IMG/VR virus record: IMGVR_UViG_3300042302_000394
Coordinates: 143,814-207,813 of that record
Strand: one strand, 5' to 3'
Length of the DNA stretch: 64,000 nt
Shown here one piece after another: positions 22,562 to 51,101 of this stretch. The position numbers and the translations under genes are program-made. The notes under the pieces were generated by a model. The model had not been told where the DNA came from, ran no database searches, and was given only the letters and a program-made list of their open reading frames with translations. The stretch's first letter is position 1. Each line of letters begins with the position of its first letter.

Positions 22562-22593
22562 TTTTATATATTCCAGTTGACAGGATATTTATT

Positions 22594-27216: not shown

Positions 27217-27239
27217 AGTATTATATTTACCCTATTTTA

Positions 27240-28931: not shown

Positions 28932-28952
28932 AACGATATTTATCGTATGCTG

Positions 28953-29243
28953 TTATCTTGACATTAATGCTTTTAGTTGTTGAATAATGTCGTTCTGCTC
29001 AGGGGGCTCTTCGCCCACTGTTTCCTGACCTGTTAGTTTGTCTATAACAGGGCTGTCTTTGCCTGCTGCGGCTTTAGCAAGTTCTAGTTCTTGCTGCTGT
29101 GGGCTGATCATCACAGGATTTTGCTGCAATTCTGTATCGGCTTCCTCGGGTGGGTTTTGACCAGCAGCATTAACCACAGGATCTTCATCACCATTAATTG
29201 TAATGGTAATAGGTACATTAATGGTGAATTCTTTTGCTCTCAT
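28953..29243 (-). CDS. Acidic hypothetical protein, putative capsid-internal protein
   Basis: Starts MRAKEF; TAAATA-4nt-ATG. Confidence 0.7.
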   Translation of the reverse strand: MRAKEFTINVPITITINGDEDPVVNAAGQNPPEEADTELQQNPVMISPQQQELELAKAAAGKDSPVIDKLTGQETVGEEPPEQNDIIQQLKALMSR

Positions 29244-29381
29244 GATGTATTTAGTTGCCGGTTACTTAATCCGGCGCCGAATTTTTTATGGCTCAGCAGT
29301 GTAATTACGCCGGCAATTTACGTTTGCTAGACGGACGCCTGCCCGGTGGGCTAACCGTTACGACAACGGACCTAAGGTGGT

Positions 29382-29822
29382 TTAGTTACACCAACTTTGT
29401 TTAGCATCGCCGTAATATTCGCGTGCTAGACCGTTGGCAATTAATCCTTGACGAATGCTCTGTCCATTGACTAAGATGTCTCCTAGAATGCGACCGCCAA
29501 ACTTGTCCCAACCGTAGATGATAACTTGATGTTTAGGGTGGGATTGAATCGCATGTGTGGTAAATTTGCTGGCCACTAATGCTCTCTCGTTTTCTTGCGG
29601 GCACTGTGCTCTGTGTCCTTTTTCCGGAGTATCAACACCAAATATACGAACTGCTAGTTCTGGCTTTAGTGGAGCAGGAAGGAATGGTGCTGCAATCACA
29701 ATAGTGTCACCGTCGCTTACACGTATAATCTGTGCGTCATAAGTTGCACCTTTAGGTGTCTTTTGTGCTAGAGCAGGAACTGCCGCCACTGCTAATAATA
29801 GGGTTAATAATAGTTTTTTCAT
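29382..29822 (-). CDS. Thermonuclease (SNase-like) with signal peptide
   Basis: MKKLLLTLLLAVAAVPALA signal; DGDT, RIFGVDTPE, DKFGGRILG motifs; start moved to ATG 29822. Confidence 0.9.
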   Translation of the reverse strand: MKKLLLTLLLAVAAVPALAQKTPKGATYDAQIIRVSDGDTIVIAAPFLPAPLKPELAVRIFGVDTPEKGHRAQCPQENERALVASKFTTHAIQSHPKHQVIIYGWDKFGGRILGDILVNGQSIRQGLIANGLAREYYGDAKQSWCN

Positions 29823-29829
29823 AATGTAT

Positions 29830-31542
29830 TTAAGTAATTTCTTGCCAGCCAATTTGTGCCAGCACGTCTGCGTTGTTTGATGTTGCTGCCATAGTTAGTG
29901 TCACAATATCGCTGACTCCTGCCAATGTTCTGCCTAACTGAAACGCAAACGCATCTGCTCCTAGTTCCGATAGTTCTCTACTGCTGACATAACCAGTTTG
30001 TAGTTCTATACCGCCCGAAACTCCTGTGGCGGCCGTGTCATATTCAACAGTTCCTGAAGTACTGGTTCCTGCCCAAGTAGCACCAGTTAGGGTAGGGTTT
30101 AGCACCAATCTCCAACGATAGTAATTCACTGTGGGACTCAGCACATCCACTTGTCTGGGCAACACAATAGCATCTAATCTTGTGCTGGCCAATCTAATGC
30201 TGACCAACGGATAGTATGTTCCGGCATTGACCAATCTCAACACACTGGTGCCACGTCCTGCTGATTCGCTGTAGGTAAATGCGTTGTAGCCACCTTCGCT
30301 GATTACAGTGGAGCATATCTGTCTCATCATACTGGATGAAGCAGTGGCTCCAGTATTGGTTATTTCATAACGCACTGGCAGTACAGCCGTGGTCATATAA
30401 GTGGTGGTATTATTCACAACATTGGCATGATGGAATGTGTGGCAAAGCACATAAGCACCGTTGACAACAAATCCACAGCGAACACTTCCCACGCCCAACC
30501 ACTCAATGTCTGTCCAAAATATCTGTGTCCTGTCTACATTTAATGCGGCGAATGGATTGTCCCAAGCGTCTTGTCTTATCCTATCTTCAACCAACGCACC
30601 TGTACTATAACTTCTTATTACCAAATAGTTATATGCGCCATCATTTTCAAAATAGACTCCGTTGTTGGTGGTAAAATATCCCACACGCTGACGCAGGTTG
30701 GCCTTGGGAGTGTTCATGGCAAAAGTGGCCAACACCAGCAGACTCTTGCCTGGCTGATAAGGAAAAACTCTTTTGGTTTCTCGTATGACACTGGATCCAT
30801 TACTTGTGCTCACTGCCAGTCTAAATGTAGAACTGTCTGTTTCGTAGACCACTGTGCCGCCAGTGCTGGTGCTACTGCTAAAATCATTGTGGTCGTAATA
30901 TCTTGCTCTACTGTCAAACAGTGTATAAGGCTCACTGACTCGCAGTCTACCAAACGCATCAGTAGATCCTGTGCCCAATGTAAATGTGTTAGTGCCAGTT
31001 AGTGTGGCAGTTACCGTACCACTGACGGGTATAGGATTACCTGAATCGTTTTTAATCTCTACTTCCGGAAGGCTTGAGATAGCAACTGTGCCAGTTATAG
31101 TCCACGGTATTGTACCTTGGTATACTGTGGAGGTGGTTGGAAAGTTAGTTACAGCAAAACTGGTGTTGCTGATTGTCAGTGTATTGCTTACAAATACAGT
31201 TGAAGTAAAATTACTTACTGTGACTGTTCCTGTGATAGCAGGTAGAGAAGAAATATTTACAGTTGATGTAAAATTGCTGACTACAACTTGTCCGTTGGTT
31301 CCTATGCTAACTGTCCAGGTGCCTTCTTGACGAACACTAATGCTTTCTAATGCAGCCAGTGTTGATGTACTTAAACTTACAGTGTCAACAATAACATCAC
31401 CTTCAAGATTGATACCATCAACATGTACACGAGCCACGGGTTGCCCCTGGCTGTTGTACTGCATAGTCTTATGAATATTTAGAAGATTGCTCTCCTGTGG
31501 ATGTTCATAGGCTGTGCTGTTCTGATAGCGATCAACCGCCAT
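29830..31542 (-). CDS. Virion structural protein
   Basis: S/T-rich VSNF repeats then a DAFGRLRVSEPYTLFD...YQPGKS...EWLGVG domain typical of phage virion proteins. Confidence 0.7.
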   Translation of the reverse strand: MAVDRYQNSTAYEHPQESNLLNIHKTMQYNSQGQPVARVHVDGINLEGDVIVDTVSLSTSTLAALESISVRQEGTWTVSIGTNGQVVVSNFTSTVNISSLPAITGTVTVSNFTSTVFVSNTLTISNTSFAVTNFPTTSTVYQGTIPWTITGTVAISSLPEVEIKNDSGNPIPVSGTVTATLTGTNTFTLGTGSTDAFGRLRVSEPYTLFDSRARYYDHNDFSSSTSTGGTVVYETDSSTFRLAVSTSNGSSVIRETKRVFPYQPGKSLLVLATFAMNTPKANLRQRVGYFTTNNGVYFENDGAYNYLVIRSYSTGALVEDRIRQDAWDNPFAALNVDRTQIFWTDIEWLGVGSVRCGFVVNGAYVLCHTFHHANVVNNTTTYMTTAVLPVRYEITNTGATASSSMMRQICSTVISEGGYNAFTYSESAGRGTSVLRLVNAGTYYPLVSIRLASTRLDAIVLPRQVDVLSPTVNYYRWRLVLNPTLTGATWAGTSTSGTVEYDTAATGVSGGIELQTGYVSSRELSELGADAFAFQLGRTLAGVSDIVTLTMAATSNNADVLAQIGWQEIT

Positions 31543-31544
31543 AA

Positions 31545-31835
31545 TTAATCAGCGTCGATAAGTGTAACGTAACCTAAACCCGTTGGACTGATAAACGCAA
31601 CGTGCGTTCCTGTAGTAACATTAAAATCCATCATAGAGTTTGCAGGAACTACACAGCTGGCAGTCGTTGCAGCAACAGTTCCTGTACCGAATGACATGAA
31701 CTGGCTAGTACCGTTGGTTACTACAGTAATACGTCTTGCGGTAATTGCTGTATTAACACTGGCTGCACCTGTTTGCAGTGTGGTGAATTTTGGAGTGGCG
31801 CTATTGCTAGCATAAAGGGTGTGATATCTACTCAT
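31545..31835 (-). CDS. Small beta-rich virion protein
   Basis: 96-aa ORF in the late operon. Confidence 0.65.
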   Translation of the reverse strand: MSRYHTLYASNSATPKFTTLQTGAASVNTAITARRITVVTNGTSQFMSFGTGTVAATTASCVVPANSMMDFNVTTGTHVAFISPTGLGYVTLIDAD

Positions 31836-31837
31836 TG

Positions 31838-32140
31838 TTATTCCTTGGTTTGAAAGTTTGGATACATGCTTACGCTGTCTGATCTAATGTCACTAGGGTT
31901 TTTAGGACCGTTTAGTCCGCCTAGCCCTGCGGCTGTGGTCACGCTGTCAATGCCTTGTACATGCACGTCTGGACTGTTGTCATACATGCCAGCAGATTTA
32001 ACTTCTACAGGTTCTGCTGATAATTGTGCAAACAGTTGTGCAAAGGCACCACCGATCGGATCTTGCTGTGTAGATTGTTGGGCGCACTCAACTTGATCAA
32101 TAAGATCCAGTACGCCACGAATAATTTCAGTTGCTCTCAT
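31838..32140 (-). CDS. Hypothetical protein, putative capsid-internal protein
   Basis: Starts MRATEII; TAAATA-6nt-ATG. Confidence 0.7.
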   Translation of the reverse strand: MRATEIIRGVLDLIDQVECAQQSTQQDPIGGAFAQLFAQLSAEPVEVKSAGMYDNSPDVHVQGIDSVTTAAGLGGLNGPKNPSDIRSDSVSMYPNFQTKE

Positions 32141-32170
32141 AATGTGTATTTACTCGTAAGTTAACACTGA

Positions 32171-34870
32171 TTAGACTATGTTGATAACATTACCCATTAC
32201 GCCATGGATAGTGCATTGATAATACAGTGTAGATGGTGCATTCATTGGCACAGTAAATGTCTGTGTGCCTGCTTGACTGCCTGAAACGCCGTCAGTATAA
32301 GCTGCGCCGCCGTCACTTACTCTAATAGCAAAGGGATGACTGCCACCCGTAGTGTTGATAAAAGTATAGGTAAATCCTCTGTATAGATATAGCACAGGAT
32401 CATTAGTGTTGCCTGCAACTACACCGGGTCCGCTGAATACGTAATCACTAGTTCCAGTAGATGATACTGACCACGTAATAGAAGCACTAGGGCCAGTTGG
32501 CCCTGTATCGCCTTGTGGTCCTTGTGGTCCAGTTACTCCTTGTGGACCAGTTGGACCTACGTTTCCTTGAACGCCTTGTGAACCACTTGGCCCAGTTGGC
32601 CCTGATGGTCCAATAAATCCTATGCCGTTTGCTCCACTAGGTCCTGATGGCCCGGTTGGCCCGGTGGGTCCTGTGGCCCCGTCGACTCCTGTGGGTCCCG
32701 ATGGCCCAGTAGGACCCGAAGGTCCTGCTACTGCGCTTGCCGGTCCTGCTGGTCCAGTGGCGCCTGATGGGCCAGTAGGTCCTGTATCACCAGATGGTCC
32801 TTGTGGACCAGTTGGGCCTGCACCTGTAGGTCCTGTATCGCCTGGAATTCCTTGAGCACCTGATGGTCCAGTTGGACCAGTTGGACCTACAGCTCCTTGA
32901 ACACCCTGTGGGCCAGTTGGACCCACGTCTCCTTGAACGCCTTGTGGACCTTGCGGGCCACCGGATGGGCCAGTTGGACCCACGTCTCCTTGAACGCCTT
33001 GTGGACCAGCAGGGCCAGTTGCACCAGTAGGCCCCTGTGGACCTACGTCTCCTTGAACGCCTTGTGGACCTTGCGGGCCACCGGATGGGCCAGTTGGACC
33101 CACGTCTCCTTGAACGCCTTGTGGACCAGCAGGGCCAGTTGCACCTACCGATCCTTGACCACCGGCAGGGCCAGTTGGACCCACGTCTCCTTGAACGCCT
33201 TGTGGACCAGCAGGACCAGTTGGACCTACAGCTCCTTGACCACCAGCAGGTCCTTGTGGGCCAGTTAGTCCTTGTGATCCGGTACTTGCAACTACAATAC
33301 CATTTACACTTATATCACCTTCGAGTGTAACTTGCAAAGGAATACCGCCAAAATATACGGTGCTAGTCCCAACATACAAACTACGCCATTGTTTATCAGC
33401 ACTACCTAAATCAAATCTTATATCATCTGTTGGAATTAAACTGTTTTGCACTTGTAAGTCTGTACCTGTTGCCAGTGACCCTATCTTTGTAAACTTAAAT
33501 GTTCCTGTTGATGAAAGCTCCGATGAAACTATGCTAGTAGTAGTAGTTCCGGAGTTAGTAAAAAACATAAACTTGGCAGTGGGGAAAGTCCCTGTGTTTT
33601 CAACTCGAACGTGTATTCTTGCGGGAGCCATGAATTGTGTTGGAGTTCGAGTTGAAAACACAAGCTCTGCAATATTATCATTTTCTAACAAAGGTGTTGG
33701 TGCAGTTGCTGTTCCTCTAGTTCTAACCCATCTAAAATCTAATGCATCTGGTTGATCAAAGTGTTGTGAAAATGACCAACCTGCGGCACCTGGTATAAAA
33801 AGTTCTCTAGACCAAGCAACACTTGTACCAGTATTAGAGGTAGCACCACCAATAAAAATTACCTGACTATCGAAATTGTAAGACATTGCTAAACTAGGAG
33901 AAATTTCTGTATTATTAGTTGTTCCGTAGAGTGCAAATCTTCCAAATTGACCAGGATTTACTCTTCCTTGTCTAATACCATCTATACTAATTCCGGTTGT
34001 TGGATCTACAGATACTTGGTAATTGTCAAAGTACATGGATGTAGATGCTACATGTATCGTTCCACTGTTTAGGTATAGATTGCCTTGTCCAGTTAGTTCT
34101 AACTTTTTAACCCAGGTAGTTTCCTGTCCGGTGGTAGGGACTGTATAGGTTTCAAATGAATTGTCAGCAACACCGATACCGAATAATGTCTGTGAATCAC
34201 CCGGTCCCGTATCCCCTAGAAATAAAACTTGATTTATGTTTGCATCTTCATTTACTAAAACTGTTGATTGCTCGTATGCCGAGGCGAATCCGTATGCTCG
34301 ATATTCACCTCCGGTAAATGGAGTTGATTCTAAGTGACGTATTCTACTATAATTGTCACTATCATAACCTCCAACAACAATAGCTTGACGAATGGTAAGT
34401 GTGTTAACATAGACGGTATTCCATCTACGTAGGTCAGATCCTAAGTTAAATTGGTTACTAGCATTGGGTAATACATTACCGGAAGTTACTAAGTTTCCAA
34501 AGCTATTTAGACTAGTAACAAAAGATCCGTTAACCAGAGACGACGTGGTTGAAAATCCGCCCCCGGTACCGGCAGGGCCAGTTGGGCCAGTCTCACCTTG
34601 TGGCCCAGCAGGGCCGGTAGGACCGGCAGCTACAGTAAATTGAACAATATTTAATGCATCATTATATACAGCAGTCATGCCACTATGACTACTATGAACT
34701 AATAGCGTAGCACCAGCGTCTGCTACTGCTTCTGTAAAATCAGTACCAGTTGTTCCTAGCAGTGTGGCAATTTCTGTAAAATTTTGATTTACTTTGATAA
34801 ATGCAGATCGTATGCTGTCACCGTCGCCTGAGTTTGCATTAGAACCTGTATTGATAACTTGAATGGTCAT
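32171..34870 (-). CDS. Tail fibre: baseplate-attachment N-terminus, GPT/GPQ collagen tract, C-terminal cupredoxin-like domain
   Basis: [26 protein letters not shown] (T4 gp9/gp10-like); long G-P-T/G-P-Q/G-P-S tract; HPF...[10 protein letters not shown]. Confidence 0.85.
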
Positions 34871-35236: not shown

Positions 35237-35749
35237 ATGAGTTCGACATTATTGTTAAATGCAGACGGAGCCCCGATTTCTTGGCTACCGTTGAGCACAA
35301 TTTCCTGGGAAGAATCTATTAAGTTCATAGTGCTTGAAAAAGCCACTGTGTTAGATGTCTACGATAATTGGGTCGTGCATAGTGCAAACTGGGAAACACA
35401 GGTTCCTGCCGTTATGATTCTTCGCGAGTACGAAAAGCGCAAGACTGCAATTCGTTATTCCAAACATAATGTGTTCCTTCGTGATGGCTATACATGCCAG
35501 TACTGTGGGGATGATGTAAGCCGTAAAACAGCCACGTTAGACCACGTGCTGCCAGTTAGTCACGGTGGTAAGACTACCTTTGAAAACACTGTCTGCGCCT
35601 GCGCGAGCTGTAATGCAAACAAGGGTAACGACAAGAAGATTGTGCCAAAGCACAAGCCAGTTAAGCCCACCTACTATCAATTAGTAGACAAGCGTAGACA
35701 GCAAAAGTGGGATATACCACACCCATCGTGGGCCAACTACTTAGGATAA
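35237..35749 (+). CDS. HNH endonuclease (McrA-like)
   Basis: RDGYTCQYCG...TLDHVLP.SHGG...EN.V.AC..CN..K; upstream TTGCTC-17-TATAAT (35173-35201). Confidence 0.92.
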   Translation: MSSTLLLNADGAPISWLPLSTISWEESIKFIVLEKATVLDVYDNWVVHSANWETQVPAVMILREYEKRKTAIRYSKHNVFLRDGYTCQYCGDDVSRKTATLDHVLPVSHGGKTTFENTVCACASCNANKGNDKKIVPKHKPVKPTYYQLVDKRRQQKWDIPHPSWANYLG

Positions 35750-36254: not shown

Positions 36255-37547
36255 TTATAGTTTCTCACCTGCTTTAAAACCTCGGAATCGAAGAGCCCGT
36301 GGAAATCGGAGGCTGTATACGTCTTCACTATCTTGGCTCCGAGTAATTGCATCTGCTCGCACTTCCAAGACTTGACCAATAACCTCATCGTCAACTTCGG
36401 CTCTCTGATCATCTGTCCAGCCAGAGCCAACATTAACACGGATGAACTTGCCATCCTCTTCGCCTTCGCAGATAACTGCGCCCATTTTGCCTTCATTTTT
36501 ACCTGTTCCTGGCTCGATGCCCACAATGGTTAAACTTACTTCGATAAATGGCTTTTGTTTGAGCCACGCCACATGACGCTTACAGACATAAGGTGCATCA
36601 ATGTCTTTGATCATAATGCCTTCAAACCCTGCATCAATGGCATCTTTGTTATATTGTTTAAATTGCATTTCACCAACTGCTGTGTCTAGATCCACTTCAA
36701 GTTGAGGAATAATATCAATGTTCCCAATCTTATCCAGTACAGACTGCATACTGCGTAGGAGATTACTACGACGGCGTTGTCCCAGAATGCTTTTACCTTT
36801 TCGGAATTCACTAAGTGGAAGAACATCAAAGGCCATCAGTCGTGCATCGCTGGCATCTGCATCGCTTTTACGATGTACCTGTTTCATTAGTGCTTGGAAG
36901 CTAGAGCTAACCACTTCACCGTCAATGACAATACTGCGATCAAACAGTTCGATGTTATCTTCAATGCCTTTGGTAATGTGTCCAAAGTTTTCTAAAATTT
37001 TGCCATTGCGGCTGTAGACAGTTGCAGTCTTAGCATCGGCATCAACAATCAACACAGCACGAACACCGTCCAGTTTAGGCTCAAGCAGTTTCTTACCTGC
37101 GACTTTGCTTTCGTGGTTGGCGCCGTCGTGAGCCAACATGCACTCGAACAATGGTACAGCGTCTTTCTTAATCTTATTGATAGTCTTTTCACTAACACCG
37201 CAACGGAGATCCTTGATTAGGATACGACGATACCAATCATTCCATTGCTTCTGTGTGCTTGCACTCAATGCCAATTCGATTGCATCACGTGCGGCATCGC
37301 CTGTTAGTTGTCGAGTGCGTAGAAGTTCGCACAGTTCTTTAAATGCAACCCAAGGCAGACCCTGTCCGCTACCACCTGTGCTGGTAGGTACTTTCTTTAC
37401 ACCAAATGTAATAAATGGACTTAGAGCCAGTTGAAAGCCTTCAAACAACTCTACGTTGTCGATTTCTGCTTCTAGGATTGCTTCTTTGTTTAGTCGGCTG
37501 GAGTGTTCTTCCAGACTGCGGATTACTGCATCGCAAGGAGTTGTCAT
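36255..37547 (-). CDS. ATP-dependent DNA ligase
   Basis: Motif I EPKLDGVR, IDGEV, EGIMIK, WLKQKP, SLRFPR. Confidence 0.95.
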   Translation of the reverse strand: MTTPCDAVIRSLEEHSSRLNKEAILEAEIDNVELFEGFQLALSPFITFGVKKVPTSTGGSGQGLPWVAFKELCELLRTRQLTGDAARDAIELALSASTQKQWNDWYRRILIKDLRCGVSEKTINKIKKDAVPLFECMLAHDGANHESKVAGKKLLEPKLDGVRAVLIVDADAKTATVYSRNGKILENFGHITKGIEDNIELFDRSIVIDGEVVSSSFQALMKQVHRKSDADASDARLMAFDVLPLSEFRKGKSILGQRRRSNLLRSMQSVLDKIGNIDIIPQLEVDLDTAVGEMQFKQYNKDAIDAGFEGIMIKDIDAPYVCKRHVAWLKQKPFIEVSLTIVGIEPGTGKNEGKMGAVICEGEEDGKFIRVNVGSGWTDDQRAEVDDEVIGQVLEVRADAITRSQDSEDVYSLRFPRALRFRGFKAGEKL

Positions 37548-37578: not shown

Positions 37579-37607
37579 ATTATACAACATTTTTGGAACA
37601 GTGTCAA
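37579..37607 (-). promoter_or_regulatory. Consensus sigma70 promoter for the ligase-infA operon
   Basis: TTGACA-17nt-TATAAT on the minus strand. Confidence 0.85.
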
Positions 37608-37625: not shown

Positions 37626-37949
37626 TTAAATGGAGAAGCTACTGCCGCAGCCGCAAGTGGATTGAGCGTTTGGATTTTTTATTGAAAAGCTAGATCCGGA
37701 AAGATCTTCTTTGTAATCAATTTCGGCACCTTGTAGATACTGCATACTCATAGCATCTACTACGACTTTAAATTCACCAATTGGAAATTGGAAATCATCT
37801 TCGTTAAATTCTTCATCAAAGGTAAATCCGTAACTAAATCCAGAACAGCCGCCACCTTGTACAAAGGTTCTTAAGGCAAGTTTTGGATTATTTTCCTCCA
37901 TTAGGAGGTCTGTAATCTTTGTCTTAGCATTTGATGTTATGTTGATCAT
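37626..37949 (-). CDS. erpA: A-type Fe-S cluster carrier (ErpA/IscA, HesB family)
   Basis: [20 protein letters not shown]...VD..S..YL.G..IDY...[12 protein letters not shown]; start moved to ATG 37949. Confidence 0.9.
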
Positions 37950-37989
37950 ACTACTATTTACACTATAAATATCCAAGCAGGAGAAAAAC

Positions 37990-38154
37990 ATGGAACAATA
38001 CATGGATGACTTTCAAAACTACAAACGATTTACAGCTAAATGCAAATGCGGATGTCCTGCACACTGCAATCATAGTTGTACTGAATGCGAATACTGCCCG
38101 GACTGCGAATGTCCAGAGTGCATAGAATTAGATAATAGCAGAGGGTACAATTAA
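37990..38154 (+). CDS. Metallothionein-like Cys-rich peptide, 54 aa (absent from the ORF track)
   Basis: TATAAATA (37964-37971), [62 protein letters not shown]; stop overlaps the next ATG. Confidence 0.8.
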
Positions 38155-38507
38155 TGGCATACTGGTCTAGAGATGATACTAAAGAATGGATCATACAGTT
38201 AGAGCATCGTATTGACGACATCGACTACTATTTGAATAAAACTTTAGAATGGTGCGAAGAATACGGTATAGAAAATCAACGTGTGATTTTTATGTGCAGT
38301 TTCTTAACCTGTATTTGGGTTAGCCAGGTTCGGGGAGAGACTATAACGTTTACAGAACTAATGGAAATGTTAGGCGTTTCGGAATGGGAAACTAATTTTA
38401 ATAACGAAGAAAAAATATATGAACTCGACAAGTGTTTCGCCGAGTTAGATCATCACGAGTTGTTAGAAACGGCCGTGCTGAAACTCAATCAGAATGACGA
38501 GTGGTAA
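38154..38507 (+). CDS. Acidic hypothetical protein
   Basis: 117 aa, TAATG coupling to the Cys-rich peptide. Confidence 0.75.
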   Translation: MAYWSRDDTKEWIIQLEHRIDDIDYYLNKTLEWCEEYGIENQRVIFMCSFLTCIWVSQVRGETITFTELMEMLGVSEWETNFNNEEKIYELDKCFAELDHHELLETAVLKLNQNDEW

Positions 38508-38759
38508 TCATTTACTGTCGTAGTCTTTAACAGGGCCGCCGTGTAATTCACTCTTAGACTTTTTGCCTTTGAGTCTTACACCGCTGCCTGCCTTGCCCTG
38601 TGTACCCGTACCGTCAGTATGATTGCTATCATGTTTAAGCATGCCGCGGCTCACGCATTGTGAATAGCGCACATTACTCAATCTAGAACGCCCAATAGAG
38701 CATTGGCTAGCAGTAGGTGCGGCTATTTTCTTTTCGGCAAGTAGTTCTGTGATTCGCAT
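38508..38759 (-). CDS. Basic hypothetical protein, putative capsid-internal protein
   Basis: Starts MRITELLAE; TAAATA-5nt-ATG. Confidence 0.7.
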   Translation of the reverse strand: MRITELLAEKKIAAPTASQCSIGRSRLSNVRYSQCVSRGMLKHDSNHTDGTGTQGKAGSGVRLKGKKSKSELHGGPVKDYDSK

Positions 38760-38767
38760 AGATTTAT

Positions 38768-39088
38768 TTATTTGAATAGGATCAAACTCATAATTACTGT
38801 CTGTGCCGCAAAGCCCAAACAGATAGTAGCAATGTACAAGAAGTTACGTTCAATAAGAGCTTTAAAAAACAGCGTGATCAATGCACTCCAAACAAATACC
38901 ATTAAATCTACAGGAGGCAGCTTATCGCTCTGCGCCATCAATACTGCTACAAGAGTAGGAATACTAGACAGATGCAGTAGGATAATTGTAACCCAACCTA
39001 ATGTATGGGCACTTACATGCCCAAGGTGATCTTTAGCAAATTTAACAAGAAATAATACTGCGTCTTTAATTTGATCAATGATAAACAT
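38768..39088 (-). CDS. Small three-TM membrane protein
   Basis: Three hydrophobic segments; directly downstream of the cell-wall hydrolase. Confidence 0.7.
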   Translation of the reverse strand: MFIIDQIKDAVLFLVKFAKDHLGHVSAHTLGWVTIILLHLSSIPTLVAVLMAQSDKLPPVDLMVFVWSALITLFFKALIERNFLYIATICLGFAAQTVIMSLILFK

Positions 39089-39096
39089 ACTTGTCC

Positions 39097-39678
39097 TTAC
39101 TTGTAAAAAATGTGATTGCCGATTTTAGTGATACGTTCTCTCTTCCAGCCTGGATTGATATAATCACCGTGGAAGTACATGGCCTCTTTTAGGCTAGGAA
39201 GGCGAAATCCTTCTAGTAGAACTTTCTTAGCGACTTCTTCGCTTTCTTTAAAAGAAGCCTTGTTCACTGCCCTAGTTGGAACAGTCCTGTCACAGACCCA
39301 ACTAAATTGGCATAGGACCTTTTCATAGACAATGTTCTTTTGATAGATTGTCTTGCAGATATCGCTTGGATACTGCCCGCTTTCAGTTCTGTTTATTGTA
39401 ACTTGTGCAACTGCAACCTTGCCCTCAAACGGCTGATTGCCTGCTTCATAATAGATGTTCTTGGCGAGACAAGCTAATTGTCTTTCGCGAACTTCTGTTG
39501 TAATTTGGGAACTATCTGTTACTTGATAATTAGATTGCTTGTTAGCAATGGCCCATTGTAATAGAGATACAGATCCATAAGCAGCTACAATCATCAACAA
39601 TAATGTGATGATCTTCAACAAAGTCGAAGAAACTTGCACCTGTGTATCTTGATCCCTATCTAGCGTTAACTCAGTCAT
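39097..39678 (-). CDS. Cell wall hydrolase, SleB/CwlJ (Hydrolase_2) family, with N-terminal TM
   Basis: CLAKNIYYEA.NQ...GK.AVAQV..NR...CQFSW.C...YFH..YI.P.W...IGNHIFY. Confidence 0.92.
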   Translation of the reverse strand: MTELTLDRDQDTQVQVSSTLLKIITLLLMIVAAYGSVSLLQWAIANKQSNYQVTDSSQITTEVRERQLACLAKNIYYEAGNQPFEGKVAVAQVTINRTESGQYPSDICKTIYQKNIVYEKVLCQFSWVCDRTVPTRAVNKASFKESEEVAKKVLLEGFRLPSLKEAMYFHGDYINPGWKRERITKIGNHIFYK

Positions 39679-40438: not shown

Positions 40439-42403
40439 ATGCCTGATAGATCTATACAATTACTAACTGATGTTTTTCCAAATTCAACTACAAATCATGG
40501 TAATTTGAACAATCCCGATATAATACTAGTCCAGGCACCTGGATGGGGAGTGCAAACAGCTCCGCTTTCTTTAGCATCACTTTCAGCCTATGTTCGGCAG
40601 AAAGGATACAAGATTTTACCATTAGATTTAAATGTTGAATTTTTTGCTATTAGACCTGAGAAATTTTCCATAATGTGGGACATAGATCAATCTCAGTGGT
40701 TTTGGGAATCTAAAGACTGCGTTAATGACCTGTTAACCGAATACAAAAAAGAAATTGATGACTTTGTCGAGTTAGTGGTGTCGACTAATACACCATTAGT
40801 TGGATTTAGTTTATACAACACTTCAATGCATACTTCGATGCATCTTATCAAACTGCTCAAAGCACGTAAGCCTGAGCTAAAGATTATTGTCGGTGGTCCT
40901 CATGCCCACCGATATCTAGCTGGTAATGTTTTGGCAAAAAATCCGTTAATAGATGCAGTCGCCCAGGCTGAGGGAGAAGAAACATTAGTAGACATAATTG
41001 AGCGTGTTCGAAAAAATCAATCATTGCTCGATTGCCCTGGATTGTTAGTGTTTAAAGACGGAGCAGTACATGCTACTCCAACAAGGCCAATGATTCCAAA
41101 AATCGACACTCTTCCGATACCCCACTACAGTGATTTTTCATTAGCTCCTTACCTATCCCCAACACGATTACCAATGGCGTCTAGTCGAGGGTGTCCTAAT
41201 AAATGTATATTCTGTAATGAGCAACCTTATTGGGAATCATATCGATTTCGGTCTGCAGAAAGCATGATTGAAGAAGTTAAGTACCAATTAAAATTATATC
41301 CTGAAATTGACTTTATTGACTTTCAAGATAGTTTATGTAACGGGAAGATAAGCGCAATTGAAAAGTTTGCCGAATACCTCATTGAAAATAAAATTAAAAT
41401 ACAATGGGCCGGACAGGCAGTTATTAGAAAAGAAATGACCGAAGAACTGATGATAAAATTAAAACAGTCCGGATGTGTGGTCATGGCCTACGGATTAGAA
41501 ACTCCAAACCCTACACTTATGAGGAGTGTAGGAAAGTTATTATCAAAAGGTGCCGATATTGATAAAATTGCTGAATCTCATGCAAGGACCGGACTTAATG
41601 CAGTTTACAATGTCATGTTTGGGTTACCGGGAGAAACTGAAGAAGATTCATTAATGGTCTTAGAGTTTTTAAGACGTAATTCAAAAAATAAATTATATGT
41701 AAATCCCAGTGCAGCATTTTGCGGATTTGCTAACGGAACTCCTGGATGGGAGAACGCAGAAAAATTCGGTATTGACAAAACACTCGGCGGAACTTTTTGG
41801 AAAAGTGTAGATGGTAATAACACATTCCTAGTTCGATTAAAAAGATTTGAAGATTTTTGTCGATTAGTTTCCGACTTAGGTATAAAAACCACTTATCCGT
41901 CGACATATCTTCTCAATAGAAATCAAGTCATTGCCCAATATTATATTGCAATAGGTCAACCAGAAAAAGCAATATACTATTACACAGAATGGGTTAAAGA
42001 TCATCCCGAAGATCAAATAGCTAAAAAGTTTTTATTCGAATATTCAGGTTTCTTAAAAAGTACCCCAAGTTCAAATGTTTATGCAATTAGCCGGCATTCG
42101 GATGAGAATTGGTTAAATGGTGTTGCTAGAAATTGGGGGCCTGCAATATTATTTTCACATGTTCCTTACATTTTAGAAGAATTAACAGTTGGTAAAATTG
42201 TACAGTTTTCAGATCTTCAAACAAGAAAAATAATTAGAGTTGAAGATAATTTTGAAAATGATTGTATTGTAATACACCTCGACGGCACTCATTTAGATGG
42301 AGATCAAGTTGGTTGGCCAAAACTAATAACTGTTTTAGAGGAGCCTAGCAAAGTTATCCCTATTAAGATAGTTAATTACACAGAAATAGATTTTAAAAAA
42401 TGA
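40439..42403 (+). CDS. Cobalamin-binding radical SAM enzyme (class B methyltransferase-like) with C-terminal extension
   Basis: PLSLASL...D.N, VGGPH, EGEE, SRGCPNKCIFC, YGLET, MFGLPGET. Confidence 0.9.
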   Translation: MPDRSIQLLTDVFPNSTTNHGNLNNPDIILVQAPGWGVQTAPLSLASLSAYVRQKGYKILPLDLNVEFFAIRPEKFSIMWDIDQSQWFWESKDCVNDLLTEYKKEIDDFVELVVSTNTPLVGFSLYNTSMHTSMHLIKLLKARKPELKIIVGGPHAHRYLAGNVLAKNPLIDAVAQAEGEETLVDIIERVRKNQSLLDCPGLLVFKDGAVHATPTRPMIPKIDTLPIPHYSDFSLAPYLSPTRLPMASSRGCPNKCIFCNEQPYWESYRFRSAESMIEEVKYQLKLYPEIDFIDFQDSLCNGKISAIEKFAEYLIENKIKIQWAGQAVIRKEMTEELMIKLKQSGCVVMAYGLETPNPTLMRSVGKLLSKGADIDKIAESHARTGLNAVYNVMFGLPGETEEDSLMVLEFLRRNSKNKLYVNPSAAFCGFANGTPGWENAEKFGIDKTLGGTFWKSVDGNNTFLVRLKRFEDFCRLVSDLGIKTTYPSTYLLNRNQVIAQYYIAIGQPEKAIYYYTEWVKDHPEDQIAKKFLFEYSGFLKSTPSSNVYAISRHSDENWLNGVARNWGPAILFSHVPYILEELTVGKIVQFSDLQTRKIIRVEDNFENDCIVIHLDGTHLDGDQVGWPKLITVLEEPSKVIPIKIVNYTEIDFKK

Positions 42404-43182
42404 AAAGTTTTTTAAATCAATATAATGTTATATCTGAAGATATACCAGGGTCCTTACAATTTCCCAGTGCATTAGTATGGGACTCGTTATTAGGTTATCA
42501 AACCGAAAATAAAGTTGTGCGTAATTTTTTAGAAATAGGTGTATTACATGGAAAGTCTGCAATGCTAAGTGGGCTATATGCACAGGCCAACAACACACAG
42601 CAGGTGATTGTAGATCCCGGTGAATGGATGGACACAACTTATTCAAATTTACTATCAAAGATTGAGGGATTAAATCTAAGATTAATAAATGATTATTCTA
42701 ACAGTTTGGTGCATTTTCATTATTCTATTTTTCAAGAACATTCTCGCGATTATTCATGGTTTCATATTGATGGCGATCATAGTTATGCACAATGCTATAA
42801 AGATTTAATTTTAGCTGATCATTTTTTGTCTGACTATGGAGTTGTTATTGTTGATGATTTCTTTTCAACCATGTTTCCTCAGGTTACAGCTAGCACTTTT
42901 TCATATTTAGAAAAACATCCATTAAATTTAAAAATGTTTTTAGTTGGTCAATGTAATAAAGCATATCTATGCAGACCGCCAGCATTTGATTTTTATAAAA
43001 CGTTTTGCATAGATGTATTATCTAAAGATATGAAAGACCGAAAATATCCTGTAACTATAACTAAAACAACTTATCCTCAGGATTTTGATTGTTACGGGTA
43101 TCAACCCATAGGATGGACTGATGACAGAATGGAGTTTCGTGGTCCGGACTGGGATAGAACTAATTTTATAAAATATACCTAA
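42400..43182 (+). CDS. Class I SAM methyltransferase (Methyltransf_24-like)
   Basis: LEIGVLHGKS...HIDGDHSY...D...L...GV..VDD. Confidence 0.85.
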   Translation: MKSFLNQYNVISEDIPGSLQFPSALVWDSLLGYQTENKVVRNFLEIGVLHGKSAMLSGLYAQANNTQQVIVDPGEWMDTTYSNLLSKIEGLNLRLINDYSNSLVHFHYSIFQEHSRDYSWFHIDGDHSYAQCYKDLILADHFLSDYGVVIVDDFFSTMFPQVTASTFSYLEKHPLNLKMFLVGQCNKAYLCRPPAFDFYKTFCIDVLSKDMKDRKYPVTITKTTYPQDFDCYGYQPIGWTDDRMEFRGPDWDRTNFIKYT

Positions 43183-43185
43183 CAG

Positions 43186-44421
43186 TTAATTTTTCCACCA
43201 CGGCAAATATTTTTCTGTATTGTGATTTCGATAAGCATCCATCTTTTTTATTATCGAAACACTGTTTTTAAAATTTATATCTGACTCAGGTGTTCCGATT
43301 AAAAATGTAATCATTGCACTCAATATGTTAGCCTTTTCTTTAACTGCATCTTTTTCAAGTAGTTCTCTATTGTTTTCAAACCAGGTTGCAATTTCTTGAT
43401 ACACTGTATTTTTATAAGCTGTTGGTAAATTACTCGGGGATGCATAGCTTGGATCGTAGATATAATTTATGTGAGGAAAGTTTAAAATATTCTTTCCTTC
43501 CAACCTCACAATATAATCTAACAATTCTGTAAATTTATGTGTATTAAAAATAGAAAACACAGTGTGAAACTCGATACCAATATTTTCGTTTTCATTCGAA
43601 TATTGAACTATGCTATCAATATTATCTTTAACAATGTTCCATTTTCCAGGATATCTAATATATTCGTACATATCAGCAACAGCATCAATACTTACTTTAA
43701 TAGTCATAGTCTTAAAATGGCTCCAGATGTCAAACCATTTTGACGGTGTCACAGTTAAATTTGTATGTATAGATAAGTCAACCTGTTTAGATAAACCTGA
43801 ACTAATTAGTTCTTTACAAAATGTATAAAAATCGTTGTTGATTAATGGTTCACCACCGGTTACTAATATCTGCACTAATCCGTCAGTCTTTACTAGGTCA
43901 AGGATATGTTTAATTTGATCATAGTTCCATTGAGCTTTATAATCACTTTCTTTTTCACCCCATGGTTTAATGTTGAGGAATTTAAATTCTTTTATTAGTT
44001 GATCGCTAGCTCCCGGGGTACACATCTTGCATTGTAGATTACACTTATTCGACCAACTTAAATCTAAGTAATTTACATCAACAGATTCTAACTTGCCCGT
44101 ATGCATTTCAGTGTTTGTTATAATATCTTCAATCGGCCATCTCTTTACAAACCAATTTCTAACACTTTCACCCCCATTGTCCTCAACATTATAACAATGC
44201 TGGCACTCGGCCACCCGCTCGCCGTCTATCATTTTCTTTCTTATATTTTTTAATTGATCAATATTGTAAAATTCAATCAAACTTGTTATCTCATTTATTT
44301 TTACAAACTTGCCATCTTTCTTTAATCTTCCTGCATTAGTAGAATTACAACAAAGACGCATATTGCCATCAGTGTGTGTAGAAAAATGATTCCATGCTAA
44401 CGGGCAATATGTCTTAGTCAT
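43186..44421 (-). CDS. Radical SAM protein with N-terminal SPASM/twitch-like Cys cluster
   Basis: CPLAW...CC...CQHCY; NKCNLQCKMC; TGGEP. Confidence 0.9.
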   Translation of the reverse strand: MTKTYCPLAWNHFSTHTDGNMRLCCNSTNAGRLKKDGKFVKINEITSLIEFYNIDQLKNIRKKMIDGERVAECQHCYNVEDNGGESVRNWFVKRWPIEDIITNTEMHTGKLESVDVNYLDLSWSNKCNLQCKMCTPGASDQLIKEFKFLNIKPWGEKESDYKAQWNYDQIKHILDLVKTDGLVQILVTGGEPLINNDFYTFCKELISSGLSKQVDLSIHTNLTVTPSKWFDIWSHFKTMTIKVSIDAVADMYEYIRYPGKWNIVKDNIDSIVQYSNENENIGIEFHTVFSIFNTHKFTELLDYIVRLEGKNILNFPHINYIYDPSYASPSNLPTAYKNTVYQEIATWFENNRELLEKDAVKEKANILSAMITFLIGTPESDINFKNSVSIIKKMDAYRNHNTEKYLPWWKN

Positions 44422-45763
44422 GTTTAAAAGCATCTTTCAAGTCTGGAATATAATCGCCGATTGAAATTCCTCTATGGTCATCAAGTATTTTAATTCTATG
44501 TTTGAATACCTTAAACAGTTTCGGATTGTCAGGCTTGGTTAATTCATTTAATAACAAGTGTATCTTTCCATCTAGTCCGGGAAAATCTTTAATGACTTGA
44601 CTATTTTCTAGATATGCTGTTAATCTCTGTGTAGCTAAATCTTTCAGAGACTGTGGTAACATTGATATTTGTTGTTCCATCGGAAACATAATTAAGTTGA
44701 TGTTATATGGCCACTCTTTAAAGTATGGATGCACTTTGGCCTGTTCTTCTATAAAATATAATAGGCTATCTAAGTTAACAATGTTCAATGAGCTAACGGT
44801 GATATTATTCAATATCTTAACATTGCTGTGTTTCATATAACTCTTTGCTTCAATGTAATTCTTTGATACCTGGCGCCATTTACTAGGATATCTAGCATAA
44901 TCGTTGACTTTATCAAACCCGTCAATACTGGCAATGAGTTCAAACTTTTTAAACTTAGGCATTAACTCTAAAAAGTTTTTATTTAGGTTTGTAAAGTTAC
45001 TGGACAAAAATACAGTAATATTTTTAGCATGATCATTGTCTACAACATATTGCAGTGCCTTTAACACAAATGGCATAATTGTAGGTTCACCACCGGCAAA
45101 ACTTAATACTTCTAGTCCAGGTGCTAATTTTGTAAAACTTTCCCATATTTCTTCATTATCAGACCAATCGGGATGTTCGACATCTTTCCATGTTTTATTA
45201 TGTTCAGTGATTCCAAACACACTGGAAATTTCAATAAATCTTCCATCTAATACTTTGATGCCACCAAATTTATTATTAAGTTCACCTAACTCTTTAGCAA
45301 TCTGACTACTGTCGTAACTGTTGCACATGACACATTTAAGGTTGCACAAATTACTAGGCTTTAATTCTAAATATGTTGGTTGGTGTAACACTTCGTAACT
45401 GTTGTTTATGCTGTTGGCAACTATCTCTAATGTTTTTCGATTATTTTTATAATCTTCAATTGACCGTGTACGCATACTAACGTCGCCGTCTCGAATGCAA
45501 CGCCTGCAAGCATCAGGAGTATCTCCTGTATGTAATTTTTTTCTTAAATCAACAAGGTGTTCGCTGTTCCACGCATCACTAAAATTATCCCCGGATAAAA
45601 TGCTAATGATATCTCCGTTCGGGTGTGTCATTGTTCCTACATAATTACAACACGGTTTAAGGTGGCCAGCGGGATTAGAACTTAGTTGTGTAAAAGGATA
45701 AAAACAAAATGTCTCACTTTCAATAATTTCTGTTCTTAATTGATCAATCTTGTCCATATTCAT
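44414..45763 (-). CDS. Radical SAM protein with N-terminal SPASM/twitch-like Cys cluster
   Basis: CFYPF...PCC...CRRC; NLCNLKCVMC; AGGEP. Confidence 0.9.
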   Translation of the reverse strand: MNMDKIDQLRTEIIESETFCFYPFTQLSSNPAGHLKPCCNYVGTMTHPNGDIISILSGDNFSDAWNSEHLVDLRKKLHTGDTPDACRRCIRDGDVSMRTRSIEDYKNNRKTLEIVANSINNSYEVLHQPTYLELKPSNLCNLKCVMCNSYDSSQIAKELGELNNKFGGIKVLDGRFIEISSVFGITEHNKTWKDVEHPDWSDNEEIWESFTKLAPGLEVLSFAGGEPTIMPFVLKALQYVVDNDHAKNITVFLSSNFTNLNKNFLELMPKFKKFELIASIDGFDKVNDYARYPSKWRQVSKNYIEAKSYMKHSNVKILNNITVSSLNIVNLDSLLYFIEEQAKVHPYFKEWPYNINLIMFPMEQQISMLPQSLKDLATQRLTAYLENSQVIKDFPGLDGKIHLLLNELTKPDNPKLFKVFKHRIKILDDHRGISIGDYIPDLKDAFKHD

Positions 45764-48689: not shown

Positions 48690-48728
48690 TACTACTAATT
48701 ATCTTAGTAGAGAATGCTTCCGAATCTT

Positions 48729-50258: not shown

Positions 50259-50261
50259 GAC

Positions 50262-51086
50262 TTATTTGTTTTTCCTATATAAGGATATCCACGATTTTCT
50301 TGCATATCTTTTACTTACAACAGCACCAGTTACAGTCATTGCCGCTAACCAAACAACACTATTTGGTATAGATAATTTATTAAATCTGTTACCGCGTAAC
50401 ATATTTGTAGCATTAGTAAATGACCATTCTACATATTTAGATGTCCACCTTGTTCCGTTTTTAAACAATAAAGGAAGAATGATTTTTGATCCAATAACCT
50501 GATAACCGCGTCGAAATGTTTCACCTAACATTGTATCATGTAAAGCATTTTCGCACCACTTTACTAATTCCATTTTTTCAGATAAAGACCAAGTGCCAGC
50601 GGTAGTCAACGCTGTTGCTACTACGCAAGCACCGGCGCTGCCGCTGCCGCTGCCGCTGGCCGAGCAACTACTACTGTTGCTGTCAGCACAAGAAACACCA
50701 CCGCCACCACCGCCGTCACCTGTAGGTGTGTAAGGAACTTCTGGGTCTGGCTGCGATGTTCCAGAAATACGCACTGTTGTGGTCTCTGATGTAGTAGTTG
50801 AACTAGCGTCCGGGTACTGACCAGACACTGTTAAAACACTGAGATAGTCACCTGTGACCAGTGTGGCCGAAGTATGGAATGTGGTAAATTCAGAACTGTA
50901 TGTACGTGGGGGCAACACCAACGGACTAGCCAGGGTAATGGGCGTTGTGGTAATGTCACTGCCCTCTCCAAATACTGTGAGATTCGCGTGTTGCAGTATC
51001 TTAGTGTTGTCAATTGTAAAAGAGAATGTGGTAACAGTGATGGTGTTTGCACTGTTGTTGTATAGTTTAAAGTTTCCCGCTGCCAT
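50262..51086 (-). CDS. Virion protein with Gly/Ser linker and a C-terminal Cys-initiated helical domain
   Basis: GDGGGGGGVSCADSNSSSCSASGSGSGSAGACVVATAL...RRGY; basic hydrophobic end. Confidence 0.6.
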   Translation of the reverse strand: MAAGNFKLYNNSANTITVTTFSFTIDNTKILQHANLTVFGEGSDITTTPITLASPLVLPPRTYSSEFTTFHTSATLVTGDYLSVLTVSGQYPDASSTTTSETTTVRISGTSQPDPEVPYTPTGDGGGGGGVSCADSNSSSCSASGSGSGSAGACVVATALTTAGTWSLSEKMELVKWCENALHDTMLGETFRRGYQVIGSKIILPLLFKNGTRWTSKYVEWSFTNATNMLRGNRFNKLSIPNSVVWLAAMTVTGAVVSKRYARKSWISLYRKNK

Positions 51087-51101
51087 ATATGTTGTTCTCT
51101 T

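What the first reader, a model, noticed from the sequence alone, without database searches (positions are those of the whole stretch)
37626..38154. Unannotated metallothionein-like peptide transcribed divergently from the Fe-S carrier ErpA/IscA
Seen: a 54-aa ORF missed by the ORF track, with 10 Cys and 2 His in 27 residues ([27 protein letters not shown]), a good RBS and TATAAATA, back-to-back with the TAAATA box of erpA only a few bases away. Known: CxC/CxxC clusters with His typify bacterial metallothioneins, and Cys-rich peptides are also substrates of SPASM radical SAM enzymes (ranthipeptides). Inference: either a metal-buffering partner supporting Fe-S supply to the four radical SAM enzymes 2-10 kb away, or their peptide substrate.
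Basis: partly seen in the sequence, partly recalled or inferred. Interest (0 to 1): 0.65.

Follow-up and report, generated by a model that had tools for sequence, protein, structure and literature searches.

The report
Cys-rich mini-protein of phage Fe-S operon
The 54-codon frame is a real, strongly conserved and usually unannotated gene of lake-water jumbo phages. It encodes a cysteine-packed mini-protein that, in relatives, is the first gene of a viral iron-sulfur assembly operon (peptide-iscU-iscA-erpA), so it is probably a new metal-binding helper of that pathway and not a substrate of the nearby radical SAM enzymes.

Summary
ORF 37990-38154(+) encodes 54 aa with 10 Cys and 2 His in 27 residues. 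It has an AGGAG ribosome-binding site and lies 40 nt from a divergent ErpA-type carrier gene. The window belongs to a 208-kb fragment of a ~350-kb lake-water phage.

The gene is real. More than 80 viral or metagenomic loci carry it, dN/dS is 0.05-0.17, and nine Cys plus His25 are invariant in a 38-sequence alignment, with Cys22 in more than 90%. No Pfam, PHROG, NCBIfam or PDB sequence match appears even at E=10, and gene callers often skip it.

Its context gives the best clue. In syntenic relatives the peptide heads a co-directional cassette, pep-iscU-iscA-erpA, with overlapping stop and start codons. Other arrangements include pep-iscU-ATC, pep-iscA and nrdA-pep-trx-nrdB. A separate T4-like clade keeps it between the gp14-like and gp15 genes.

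The nearby radical SAM genes are one B12-type enzyme and three N-terminal-twitch enzymes. They are not ranthipeptide maturases, and they are not conserved next to the peptide.

My best reading is a metal or Fe-S cluster mini-protein that acts as an accessory of the phage ISC system. Which metal it binds and what it does there remain untested. It is not a member of the SmtA/BmtA metallothionein family by sequence.

The parts
37990..38154 (+). Gene for the 54-aa Cys-rich mini-protein ('pep'). It has an N-terminal helix-prone segment (Y-M-D-D-F/Y-x-x-Y-K-R-F), a 27-residue core with 10 Cys and His25, and a short C-terminal tail.
   Evidence: Conserved in 35 IMG/VR loci and 25 metagenome loci, plus distant kin. 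dN/dS is 0.05-0.17. Invariant residues are listed.
37979..37983 (+). Shine-Dalgarno AGGAG, 6 nt upstream of the ATG.
   Evidence: Conserved in all syntenic loci.
37964..37971 (+). TATAAATA, a -10-like element in the 40-nt divergent spacer. Its function is unverified.
   Evidence: not enriched in the window; no sigma-70 pair found. In relatives only ATAAATA is kept.
37626..37949 (-). ErpA-type A-type Fe-S carrier, 107 aa, transcribed divergently.
   Evidence: PF01521 at 1.5e-18. 83-97% identical in syntenic loci. It is the ErpA paralogue type rather than the IscA type.
38154..38507 (+). o117, a 117-aa protein of unknown family. Its ATG overlaps the peptide's stop codon (TAATG), so it is probably co-translated with the peptide.
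   Evidence: No Pfam, PHROG or NCBIfam hit. 83 homologous clusters. In L080 and L081 a 46%-identical homologue follows iscA with a 4-nt overlap in an iscU...iscA cassette. In L061 it follows pep-iscA.
36255..37547 (-). ATP-dependent DNA ligase. It serves as a synteny anchor on the erpA side.
   Evidence: Conserved next to the ISC genes in L086-L091, L097 and L101-L106.
38508..39678 (-). o83, o106 and a SleB-like cell-wall hydrolase. They serve as synteny anchors on the peptide side.
   Evidence: The same genes precede pep-iscU-iscA-erpA-ligase on one strand in L102.

Best explanation
The frame is a genuine phage gene for a 45-62-aa metal-cluster mini-protein, and it is an accessory component of a virus-encoded ISC-type iron-sulfur assembly module.

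Shown: the protein is under strong purifying selection. Nine Cys and one His are invariant across the family, and a tenth Cys is nearly so. In relatives that share the window's flanking genes, the peptide is the first cistron of a co-directional, translationally coupled cassette, pep-iscU-iscA-erpA. The window's layout is a rearranged version of that cassette: the peptide lies divergent to erpA and is coupled to o117, while iscU-iscA sit 45 kb away beside nrdA-nrdB-grx.

Inferred: the 11 conserved thiolate/imidazole ligands packed into 27 residues fold around a polynuclear metal centre. This could be an Fe-S cluster or an M4-type thiolate cluster of the kind seen in the metallothionein alpha-domain (M4Cys11) and in SmtA (Zn4Cys9His2). 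The conserved N-terminal helix would dock the protein on IscU or an A-type carrier. My committed guess is that it works at the entry of the pathway, holding and handing over iron or a cluster, or passing electrons, to IscU and the carriers. That would boost Fe-S supply to the phage's many Fe-S clients: 7 radical SAM genes in this record, and possibly the RNR system beside which the ISC genes sit.
For: It is a real gene. 35 IMG/VR loci are 80-100% identical. Synonymous sites are saturated while the protein stays 80-85% identical, dN/dS is 0.05-0.17, and Cys codons flip between TGC and TGT. The exhaustive HMM search finds 19 further representatives of 45-60 aa with the same Cys/His register, plus one 88-aa protein and one spurious 1,594-aa repeat protein. 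The invariant columns are C18, C20, H25, C26, C30, C33, C36, C39, C41 and C44, and C22 is kept in more than 90%.

It is linked to ISC genes in these arrangements:
- Window type, erpA<>pep.
- L061: erpA<>pep-iscA-o117 with overlapping stop and start codons.
- L055: pep-iscU-iscA(IscA type). L058: pep-iscU-erpA type, with different flanks.
- L102: o183-sleB-o106-o83-pep-iscU-iscA-erpA-ligase on one strand.
- L104-L106: iscA<>pep-iscU-erpA..ligase.
- L100: ATC..pep-iscU. L101 and L103: pep-ATC-ligase.

It also has a related redox/iron context. nrdA-pep-trx-nrdB occurs in L053, L059, L060 and L077. G000 itself carries nrdA-nrdB-iscU-iscA-grx. A Dps/ferritin gene lies two to three genes upstream in L064 and L065. 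ErpA-type genes lie 6-8 kb away in G006 and G007.

The co-translated neighbour o117 is independently tied to iscA. Phage ISC genes travelling with radical SAM clients are documented in marine T4-like genomes (PMC5332604).
Against: No experiment or structure shows metal binding. AlphaFold2 models are low confidence (pLDDT 53 and 58), and the fold search on the model found nothing.

In a large T4-like clade the peptide sits between a gp14-like virion protein and the gp15 tail-sheath stabiliser, with no ISC gene within 6 kb. In G001 the only A-type carrier found in the 151-kb fragment is about 70 kb away. Other contexts (GH19-like, DUF6267, DNA polymerase region) show no Fe-S gene next door.

Many ISC-adjacent loci share ligase and sleB synteny, so part of the association is inherited rather than independently re-created. 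G006 and G007 also encode a classical 2x[4Fe-4S] ferredoxin near erpA, so a 'replacement ferredoxin' role is not required there. No RNA data exist for this phage.
Confidence: 0.55

Rival explanations
1. It is a generic metallothionein-like metal sponge. The peptide would sequester Zn, Cu, Cd or Co during infection, for instance to keep IscU and the A-type carriers from being poisoned by these thiophilic metals, without taking part in cluster assembly itself.
For: Cys density is 37% in the core, with CxC and CxxC motifs and a conserved His. Eleven conserved ligand residues equal the ligand count of M4 clusters in the metallothionein alpha-domain and SmtA (established knowledge). The spacing of the fourth-to-sixth Cys tolerates a shift in one subfamily, C-x4-C-x-C instead of C-x2-C-x2-C, as in metallothioneins. 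The gene lies next to proteins known to be inhibited by Zn, Cu and Co (my own knowledge of the E. coli literature).
Against: No metallothionein model matches even at E=10. Unlike typical metallothioneins, non-ligand residues and a 15-residue aromatic and charged N-terminal segment are strongly conserved, which points to a specific protein partner. Translational coupling to iscU, iscA or o117 suggests a stoichiometric partner rather than a bulk buffer.
Confidence: 0.15
2. It is a Zn-stabilised small protein with a role unrelated to Fe-S, such as a virion neck or assembly factor or a host-takeover binder. Its position beside ISC genes in one phage clade would then be inherited synteny.
For: The widest sequence spread at one fixed position is in the T4-like neck module. 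There the gene overlaps both the gp14-like and the gp15 genes, and the peptides range from 48 to 85% identity to the window's. Several other contexts lack Fe-S genes.
Against: T4-like phages often carry auxiliary genes inside structural modules. A NUDIX gene and a 2OG-Fe(II) oxygenase gene lie next to this one. The ISC adjacency persists through inversions, paralogue swaps (ErpA type versus IscA type) and gain or loss of iscU. It also occurs in L055 and L058, which lack the ligase and sleB anchors.
Confidence: 0.2
3. It is a RiPP precursor (ranthipeptide or sactipeptide-like) whose Cys are cross-linked by the radical SAM enzymes 2-10 kb downstream.
For: It is a Cys-rich short peptide with a conserved N-terminal 'leader-like' segment. 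Four radical SAM genes lie at 40439-48689. The B12-type enzyme scores weakly against RiPP C-methyltransferase models (113 bits against cut-offs of 282-750).
Against: There is no hit to SCIFF or other precursor models. The three SPASM-like enzymes are NF033640 N-terminal-twitch radical SAMs (E=1e-91 to 1e-105), not maturase equivalogs. The cluster also has a distinct low G+C content (31-37%). It is absent from the flanks of most syntenic relatives and from every other context. No RiPP recognition, protease or exporter gene is adjacent. The whole peptide, core included, is conserved, unlike typical leader/core patterns.
Confidence: 0.04

Closest known systems
Bacterial metallothioneins SmtA/BmtA (Pfam PF02069)
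   Same: Similar size (about 55 aa). Eleven Cys/His ligand residues (SmtA has 9 Cys and 2 His; here 10 Cys and 1 invariant His). CxC motifs.
   Different: No sequence match at E<=10. The ligands are packed into 27 residues rather than spread over about 46. There is a conserved aromatic and charged N-terminal segment. The gene is phage-borne and sits in an operon with iscU, iscA and erpA. Metal content is unknown.
ISC-operon accessory proteins of bacteria: ferredoxin Fdx, IscX and CyaY, and YfaE of the nrdAB operon
   Same: A small protein encoded in the same operon as iscU and iscA, or between nrdA and nrdB. This mirrors fdx and iscX in the isc operon and yfaE after nrdB in E. coli (established knowledge).
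   Different: No homology to PF00111 or IscX models. It has a different Cys pattern. It is the first cistron, not a late one. Its redox or iron-donor activity is untested.
SCIFF / ranthipeptide precursors
   Same: About 45-55 aa, with many Cys in the C-terminal half.
   Different: No model match. No adjacent dedicated radical SAM/SPASM maturase. The neighbourhood with radical SAM genes is not conserved.
Viral Fe-S auxiliary metabolic genes (A-type carriers and IscU in marine T4-like genomes; Nishimura et al. 2017, PMC5332604)
   Same: The same kind of module: phage iscU and A-type carrier genes together with radical SAM and glutaredoxin genes.
   Different: That work does not mention a Cys-rich peptide; a search of its text for 'cysteine-rich' gave 0 hits. 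The peptide would be a further, unannotated member of the module.

Membership tests
Bacterial metallothionein SmtA/BmtA (PF02069) | Sequence match to the family model | tested here: not met
   No Pfam family for the window peptide at E<=0.01, and none for the 25 family members at E<=10. No PDB sequence at E<=10.
Bacterial metallothionein SmtA/BmtA (PF02069) | Conserved Cys9His2-type ligand set able to hold an M4 cluster | tested here: inconclusive
   Ten Cys and His25 are conserved, giving 11 ligand residues. The count matches, but the spacing differs and H28 is not conserved.
Bacterial metallothionein SmtA/BmtA (PF02069) | Binds several Zn, Cd or Cu ions per chain | not testable with these tools
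   Needs ICP-MS or native MS on purified protein.
SCIFF / ranthipeptide precursor | Match to a precursor model (six Cys in forty-five residues) | tested here: not met
   NCBIfam scan of the peptide gave 0 families.
SCIFF / ranthipeptide precursor | Adjacent, co-conserved radical SAM/SPASM maturase | tested here: not met
   The nearest radical SAM gene is 2.3 kb away and is B12-type. The others are NF033640 N-terminal-twitch enzymes. None is kept next to the peptide in relatives.
ISC-operon accessory protein (functional class, not a homology family) | Encoded in one operon with iscU and/or A-type carrier genes | tested here: met
   pep-iscU-iscA-erpA in L102, pep-iscU-erpA in L105 and L106, pep-iscU-ATC in L055 and L058, and pep-iscA in L061, with overlapping or abutting cistrons.
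ISC-operon accessory protein (functional class, not a homology family) | Homology to Fdx, IscX, CyaY or HscB | tested here: not met
   No Pfam or NCBIfam hit.
ISC-operon accessory protein (functional class, not a homology family) | Physical or functional interaction with IscU or the carriers | tested here: inconclusive
   The complex prediction of the ErpA dimer with the peptide gave 'no answer' (score 0.00).
Clostridial-type 2x[4Fe-4S] ferredoxin | Two CxxCxxCxxxCP motifs and a match to the Fer4 models | tested here: not met
   The sequence lacks the motif, and there is no Fer4 hit.

The most novel reading that the evidence does not exclude
The peptide founds an undescribed class of Fe-S biogenesis factor. 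It would be a virus-specific, roughly 50-residue metal-cluster protein that completes a minimal viral ISC system (pep-IscU-IscA-ErpA). It would supply iron, electrons or a pre-formed cluster to IscU, so that the phage needs only the host cysteine desulfurase.
Probability: 0.3. Interest if true: 0.75.

Novelty: new variant of a known kind. Interest (0 to 1): 0.6.

Why it matters
Phage-encoded Fe-S assembly genes are recognised auxiliary metabolic genes, but how a bare IscU/A-type-carrier set works inside an infected cell is unknown. A conserved, unannotated first cistron of that operon is a concrete and cheap target: about 50 residues, easy to synthesise or express. It could reveal a new way to feed iron, electrons or clusters into the ISC pathway, or a new minimal metal-thiolate fold.

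The case also shows that routine gene calling misses a strongly selected small protein in many lake and ocean viral genomes. Finally, the link that matters is between the peptide and the Fe-S machinery, not between the peptide and the radical SAM enzymes as substrate and modifier.

Tried and rejected
- **Family and sequence scans found nothing.** Pfam, PHROG and NCBIfam scans of the peptide gave no hit. The PDB sequence profile search gave none at E<=10.
- **The language-model atlas gave no usable lead.** Its best score was 0.83, below the level the tool treats as meaningful.
- **Structure prediction was too uncertain to use.** AlphaFold2 with 14 and then 38 sequences gave pLDDT 53 and 58. Foldseek of the better model against the PDB returned nothing, and I draw no conclusion from it.
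- **The complex prediction gave no verdict.** The ErpA dimer with the peptide scored 0.00, 'no answer', which is not evidence for or against binding.
- **Searches of named phage records were blank.** megablast and tblastn against the phage collection found no match.
- **A scan of cellular genomes found no relative.** No contig among 185,579 species genomes matched with the close-family patterns.
- **A T4 late-promoter reading of TATAAATA is not supported.** The motif is not enriched (5 found, 4.96 expected), and the other four sites are poorly placed.
- **No expression data exist.** All 24 runs that hold the locus are lake or freshwater DNA metagenomes, so I did not use read laying.
- **One hit was spurious.** The 1,594-aa protein in the big HMM search is a dockerin repeat protein.
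- **The T4 gp15 family was not found in the 208-kb record.** This is inconclusive because the record is about 58% complete.

Full report
**What is there.** The window is bases 143814-207813 of a 207,813-base IMG/VR virus record that CheckV rates 58% complete, which implies a jumbo phage of about 350 kb. The locus occurs in identical form in at least 24 lake-water or freshwater metagenome runs, and none of those runs is RNA.
- **The ORF.** ORF 37990..38154 (+) encodes 54 residues.
- **Translation and promoter signals.** AGGAG lies 6 nt before the ATG, and TATAAATA lies at 37964-37971.
- **Upstream neighbour.** The divergent gene 37626..37949 (-) is an A-type Fe-S carrier (PF01521, E=1.5e-18), 40 nt away.
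- **Downstream neighbour.** The peptide's stop codon overlaps the ATG of a 117-codon gene, o117 (38154..38507), which matches no Pfam, PHROG or NCBIfam family.
- **Rarity.** Of 1,896 stop-to-stop frames of at least 40 aa in the record, this is the only one with 10 Cys in 27 residues.
- **Promoter claims.** These are not verifiable. TATAAATA is not enriched (5 found, 4.96 expected). No sigma-70 pair is found in the spacer. The proposed erpA box sits about 5 nt from the erpA start codon.

**It is a real gene.**
- **Conservation at the DNA level.** A back-translated pattern scan found the frame in 35 viral contigs at 80-100% identity and in 25 further metagenome contigs.
- **Relative to its neighbours.** In the syntenic relatives the flanking genes are 57-81% identical, while the peptide is 86-94% and ErpA 83-97% identical.
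- **Selection.** dN/dS is 0.05-0.17. Synonymous sites are saturated between the two main groups while the protein stays 80-85% identical. Cys codons switch between TGC and TGT.
- **Family size.** An exhaustive HMM search of 1.84 billion representatives returned 21 hits. Nineteen are proteins of 45-60 aa with the same register and one is 88 aa. The remaining 1,594-aa hit is a spurious dockerin repeat protein.
- **Invariant residues.** In 38 sequences, C18, C20, H25, C26, C30, C33, C36, C39, C41 and C44 are invariant, and C22 is kept in more than 90%. H28 is not conserved. The N-terminal segment Y-M-D-D-Y-x-x-Y-K-R-F is well kept.
- **No known relatives.** No Pfam, PHROG, NCBIfam or PDB sequence matches even at E=10.
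- **Annotation gap.** In two public assemblies (L078, L079) the intact frame was not called as a gene. This explains the sparse protein-database record (3 clusters).
- **Cellular genomes.** No contig among 185,579 species genomes carries a close relative.

**Context is the informative part.** I grouped loci by their neighbouring genes.

| Type | Loci | Arrangement |
|---|---|---|
| (a) Window type | L001-L016, L033, L034, L078, L079, L086-L089, L091 | ligase, erpA (-) <> pep, o117 (+), then o83, o106, sleB, o183 (-) |
| (b) | L102 | o183-sleB-o106-o83-pep-iscU-iscA-erpA-ligase, all on one strand |
| (c) | L104-L106 | iscA (-) <> pep-iscU-erpA ... ligase |
| (d) | L061 | erpA <> pep-iscA-o117 |
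| (e) | L100, L101, L103 | ATC..pep-iscU (L100); pep-ATC-ligase (L101, L103) |
| (f) | L055, L058 | pep-iscU-ATC with unrelated flanks; IscA type in L055, ErpA type in L058 |
| (g) | L053, L059, L060, L077 | nrdA(-methyltransferase)-pep-thioredoxin-nrdB |
| (h) | L017-L032, L050-L052, L075, L076, L090, L092-L096, L098, L099, L108, and the contig of P0010 | T4-like clade: gp13 <> gp14-like-pep-gp15-NUDIX |
| (i) | L064-L067, L062, L063, L107, L110, L068-L073, L056, L057 | Dps...pep...DNA polymerase region; GH19-like-pep; DUF6267-pep; unknown neighbours |

- **Type (b).** L102 carries the same gene set as the window. There pep (3986-4156) shares one base with the start of iscU (4156-4539), followed by iscA (4511-4837) and erpA (about 4842-5171). 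The window's layout is therefore a rearranged version of a pep-iscU-iscA-erpA cassette.
- **This record's iscU and iscA.** In G000 they sit 45 kb away in nrdA-nrdB-iscU-iscA-grx.
- **Type (f).** The carrier paralogue differs between L055 and L058.
- **Type (h).** The peptides there range from 48 to 85% identity to the window's, and the gene abuts or overlaps both neighbours.
- **G006 and G007.** An ErpA-type gene lies 6-8 kb from the peptide. A classical 2x[4Fe-4S] ferredoxin lies beside that erpA.

**o117 is also tied to ISC genes.** It has 83 homologous clusters. In L080 and L081 a 46%-identical homologue follows iscA with a 4-nt overlap, in an iscU-hydrolase-(radical SAM)-iscA-o117 cassette that lacks the peptide.

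**The radical SAM idea.**
- **What the enzymes are.** The 654-aa enzyme is a B12-binding radical SAM, far below every equivalog cut-off. The 415-, 449- and 981-aa enzymes match NF033640, the N-terminal-twitch radical SAM subfamily (E=1e-91 to 1e-105).
- **Their setting.** They sit beside a methyltransferase in a low-G+C block of 31-37%.
- **No link to the peptide.** The peptide matches no precursor model. The cluster is absent from the flanks of most syntenic relatives and from all other contexts. I give the RiPP reading about 4%.
- **A more natural reading.** The enzymes are clients of Fe-S supply. This record has 7 radical SAM genes, 2 A-type carriers and 1 IscU. The pattern matches what is described for marine T4-like genomes (PMC5332604).

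**Mechanism.**
- **Shown.** The gene is under purifying selection, has an invariant set of 10 Cys and 1 His, and belongs to an operon with iscU, iscA and erpA in several arrangements.
- **Inferred from established chemistry.** Eleven thiolate/imidazole ligands in 27 residues cannot form separate mononuclear sites with four ligands each. They fit a polynuclear centre. The same ligand count builds the M4 clusters of the metallothionein alpha-domain (Cys11) and SmtA (Cys9His2). Fe-S clusters with a His ligand are typical of cluster-transfer and sensing proteins.
- **Inferred from conservation.** The conserved N-terminal helix-prone segment suggests a specific docking partner. The helix prediction comes from low-confidence models.
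- **My committed reading (0.55).** The peptide is an accessory of the viral ISC pathway that acts with IscU and the carriers, holding or passing iron, a cluster or electrons. Which of these it does is open.
- **Rivals.** A Zn-stabilised protein unrelated to Fe-S, on the strength of the gp14/gp15 position (0.2). A plain metal buffer (0.15). A RiPP precursor (0.04).

**Comparison with known families.** The peptide works like a metallothionein or mini-ferredoxin in composition, and like Fdx, IscX or YfaE in gene position. It fails the sequence membership tests for all of them. It is best filed as a new, unnamed small-protein family of aquatic jumbo and T4-like phages, and so as a new variant of the metal-thiolate mini-protein kind attached to a known viral auxiliary module.

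**What failed or gave no answer.** The AlphaFold2 models were low confidence, and the fold search on the better one was empty. The complex prediction gave no verdict. No RNA runs exist.

Noticed in passing
window 37579-37607 (-): A perfect sigma-70 consensus promoter (TTGACA, 17 nt, TATAAT; 12 of 12 matches) lies between the erpA stop codon and the DNA ligase start codon. The ligase may therefore have its own strong host-type promoter.
   Followed up: no
window 40439-51929: A low-G+C (31-37%) block holds a B12-binding radical SAM, a Methyltransf_24 protein and three paralogous N-terminal-twitch radical SAMs (NF033640). One of the three is fused to a 560-aa N-terminal extension. Three further ORFs of 509, 274 and 275 aa match no family. 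The substrate is unknown; a small-molecule, sugar or nucleic-acid modification pathway is my guess.
   Followed up: partly
G000:C1 about 135.8-138.3 kb (locus L074), outside the window: The same phage carries nrdA-nrdB-iscU-iscA-glutaredoxin on one strand, so class I RNR and ISC genes form one operon-like block.
   Followed up: partly
window 38154-38507 (+); L080 2710-3036; L081 3501-3827: The o117 family has 83 clusters and no annotation. It is itself translationally coupled to iscA in distant phages that lack the peptide, which makes it a second unknown candidate ISC accessory protein.
   Followed up: partly
L078 and L079, about 2675-2839: The intact peptide frame lies between erpA and a 221-aa GDSL-like gene, but the JGI and ENA gene callers did not call it. 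This is evidence that the family is systematically under-annotated.
   Followed up: yes
L082 2-274 (-) and L083 453-773 (-): A classical 2x[4Fe-4S] ferredoxin gene lies near the ErpA-type gene in the two phage records whose peptide follows a GH19-like gene.
   Followed up: no
window 18007-34870 (-): A run of large collagen-repeat tail-fibre paralogues (659, 747, 1540, 563 and 899 aa) is followed by an HNH endonuclease gene at 35237-35749 (+).
   Followed up: no
window 5612-8980 (-): A 1,122-aa protein combines glycosyltransferase-like and methyltransferase-like regions and sits next to the baseplate and tail genes.
   Followed up: no
window 63330-63404 (+): This is a tRNA-Arg(TCT), the only tRNA in the window. 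The last 10 kb of the window has higher G+C (about 48%), positive AT skew and only short ORFs.
   Followed up: no
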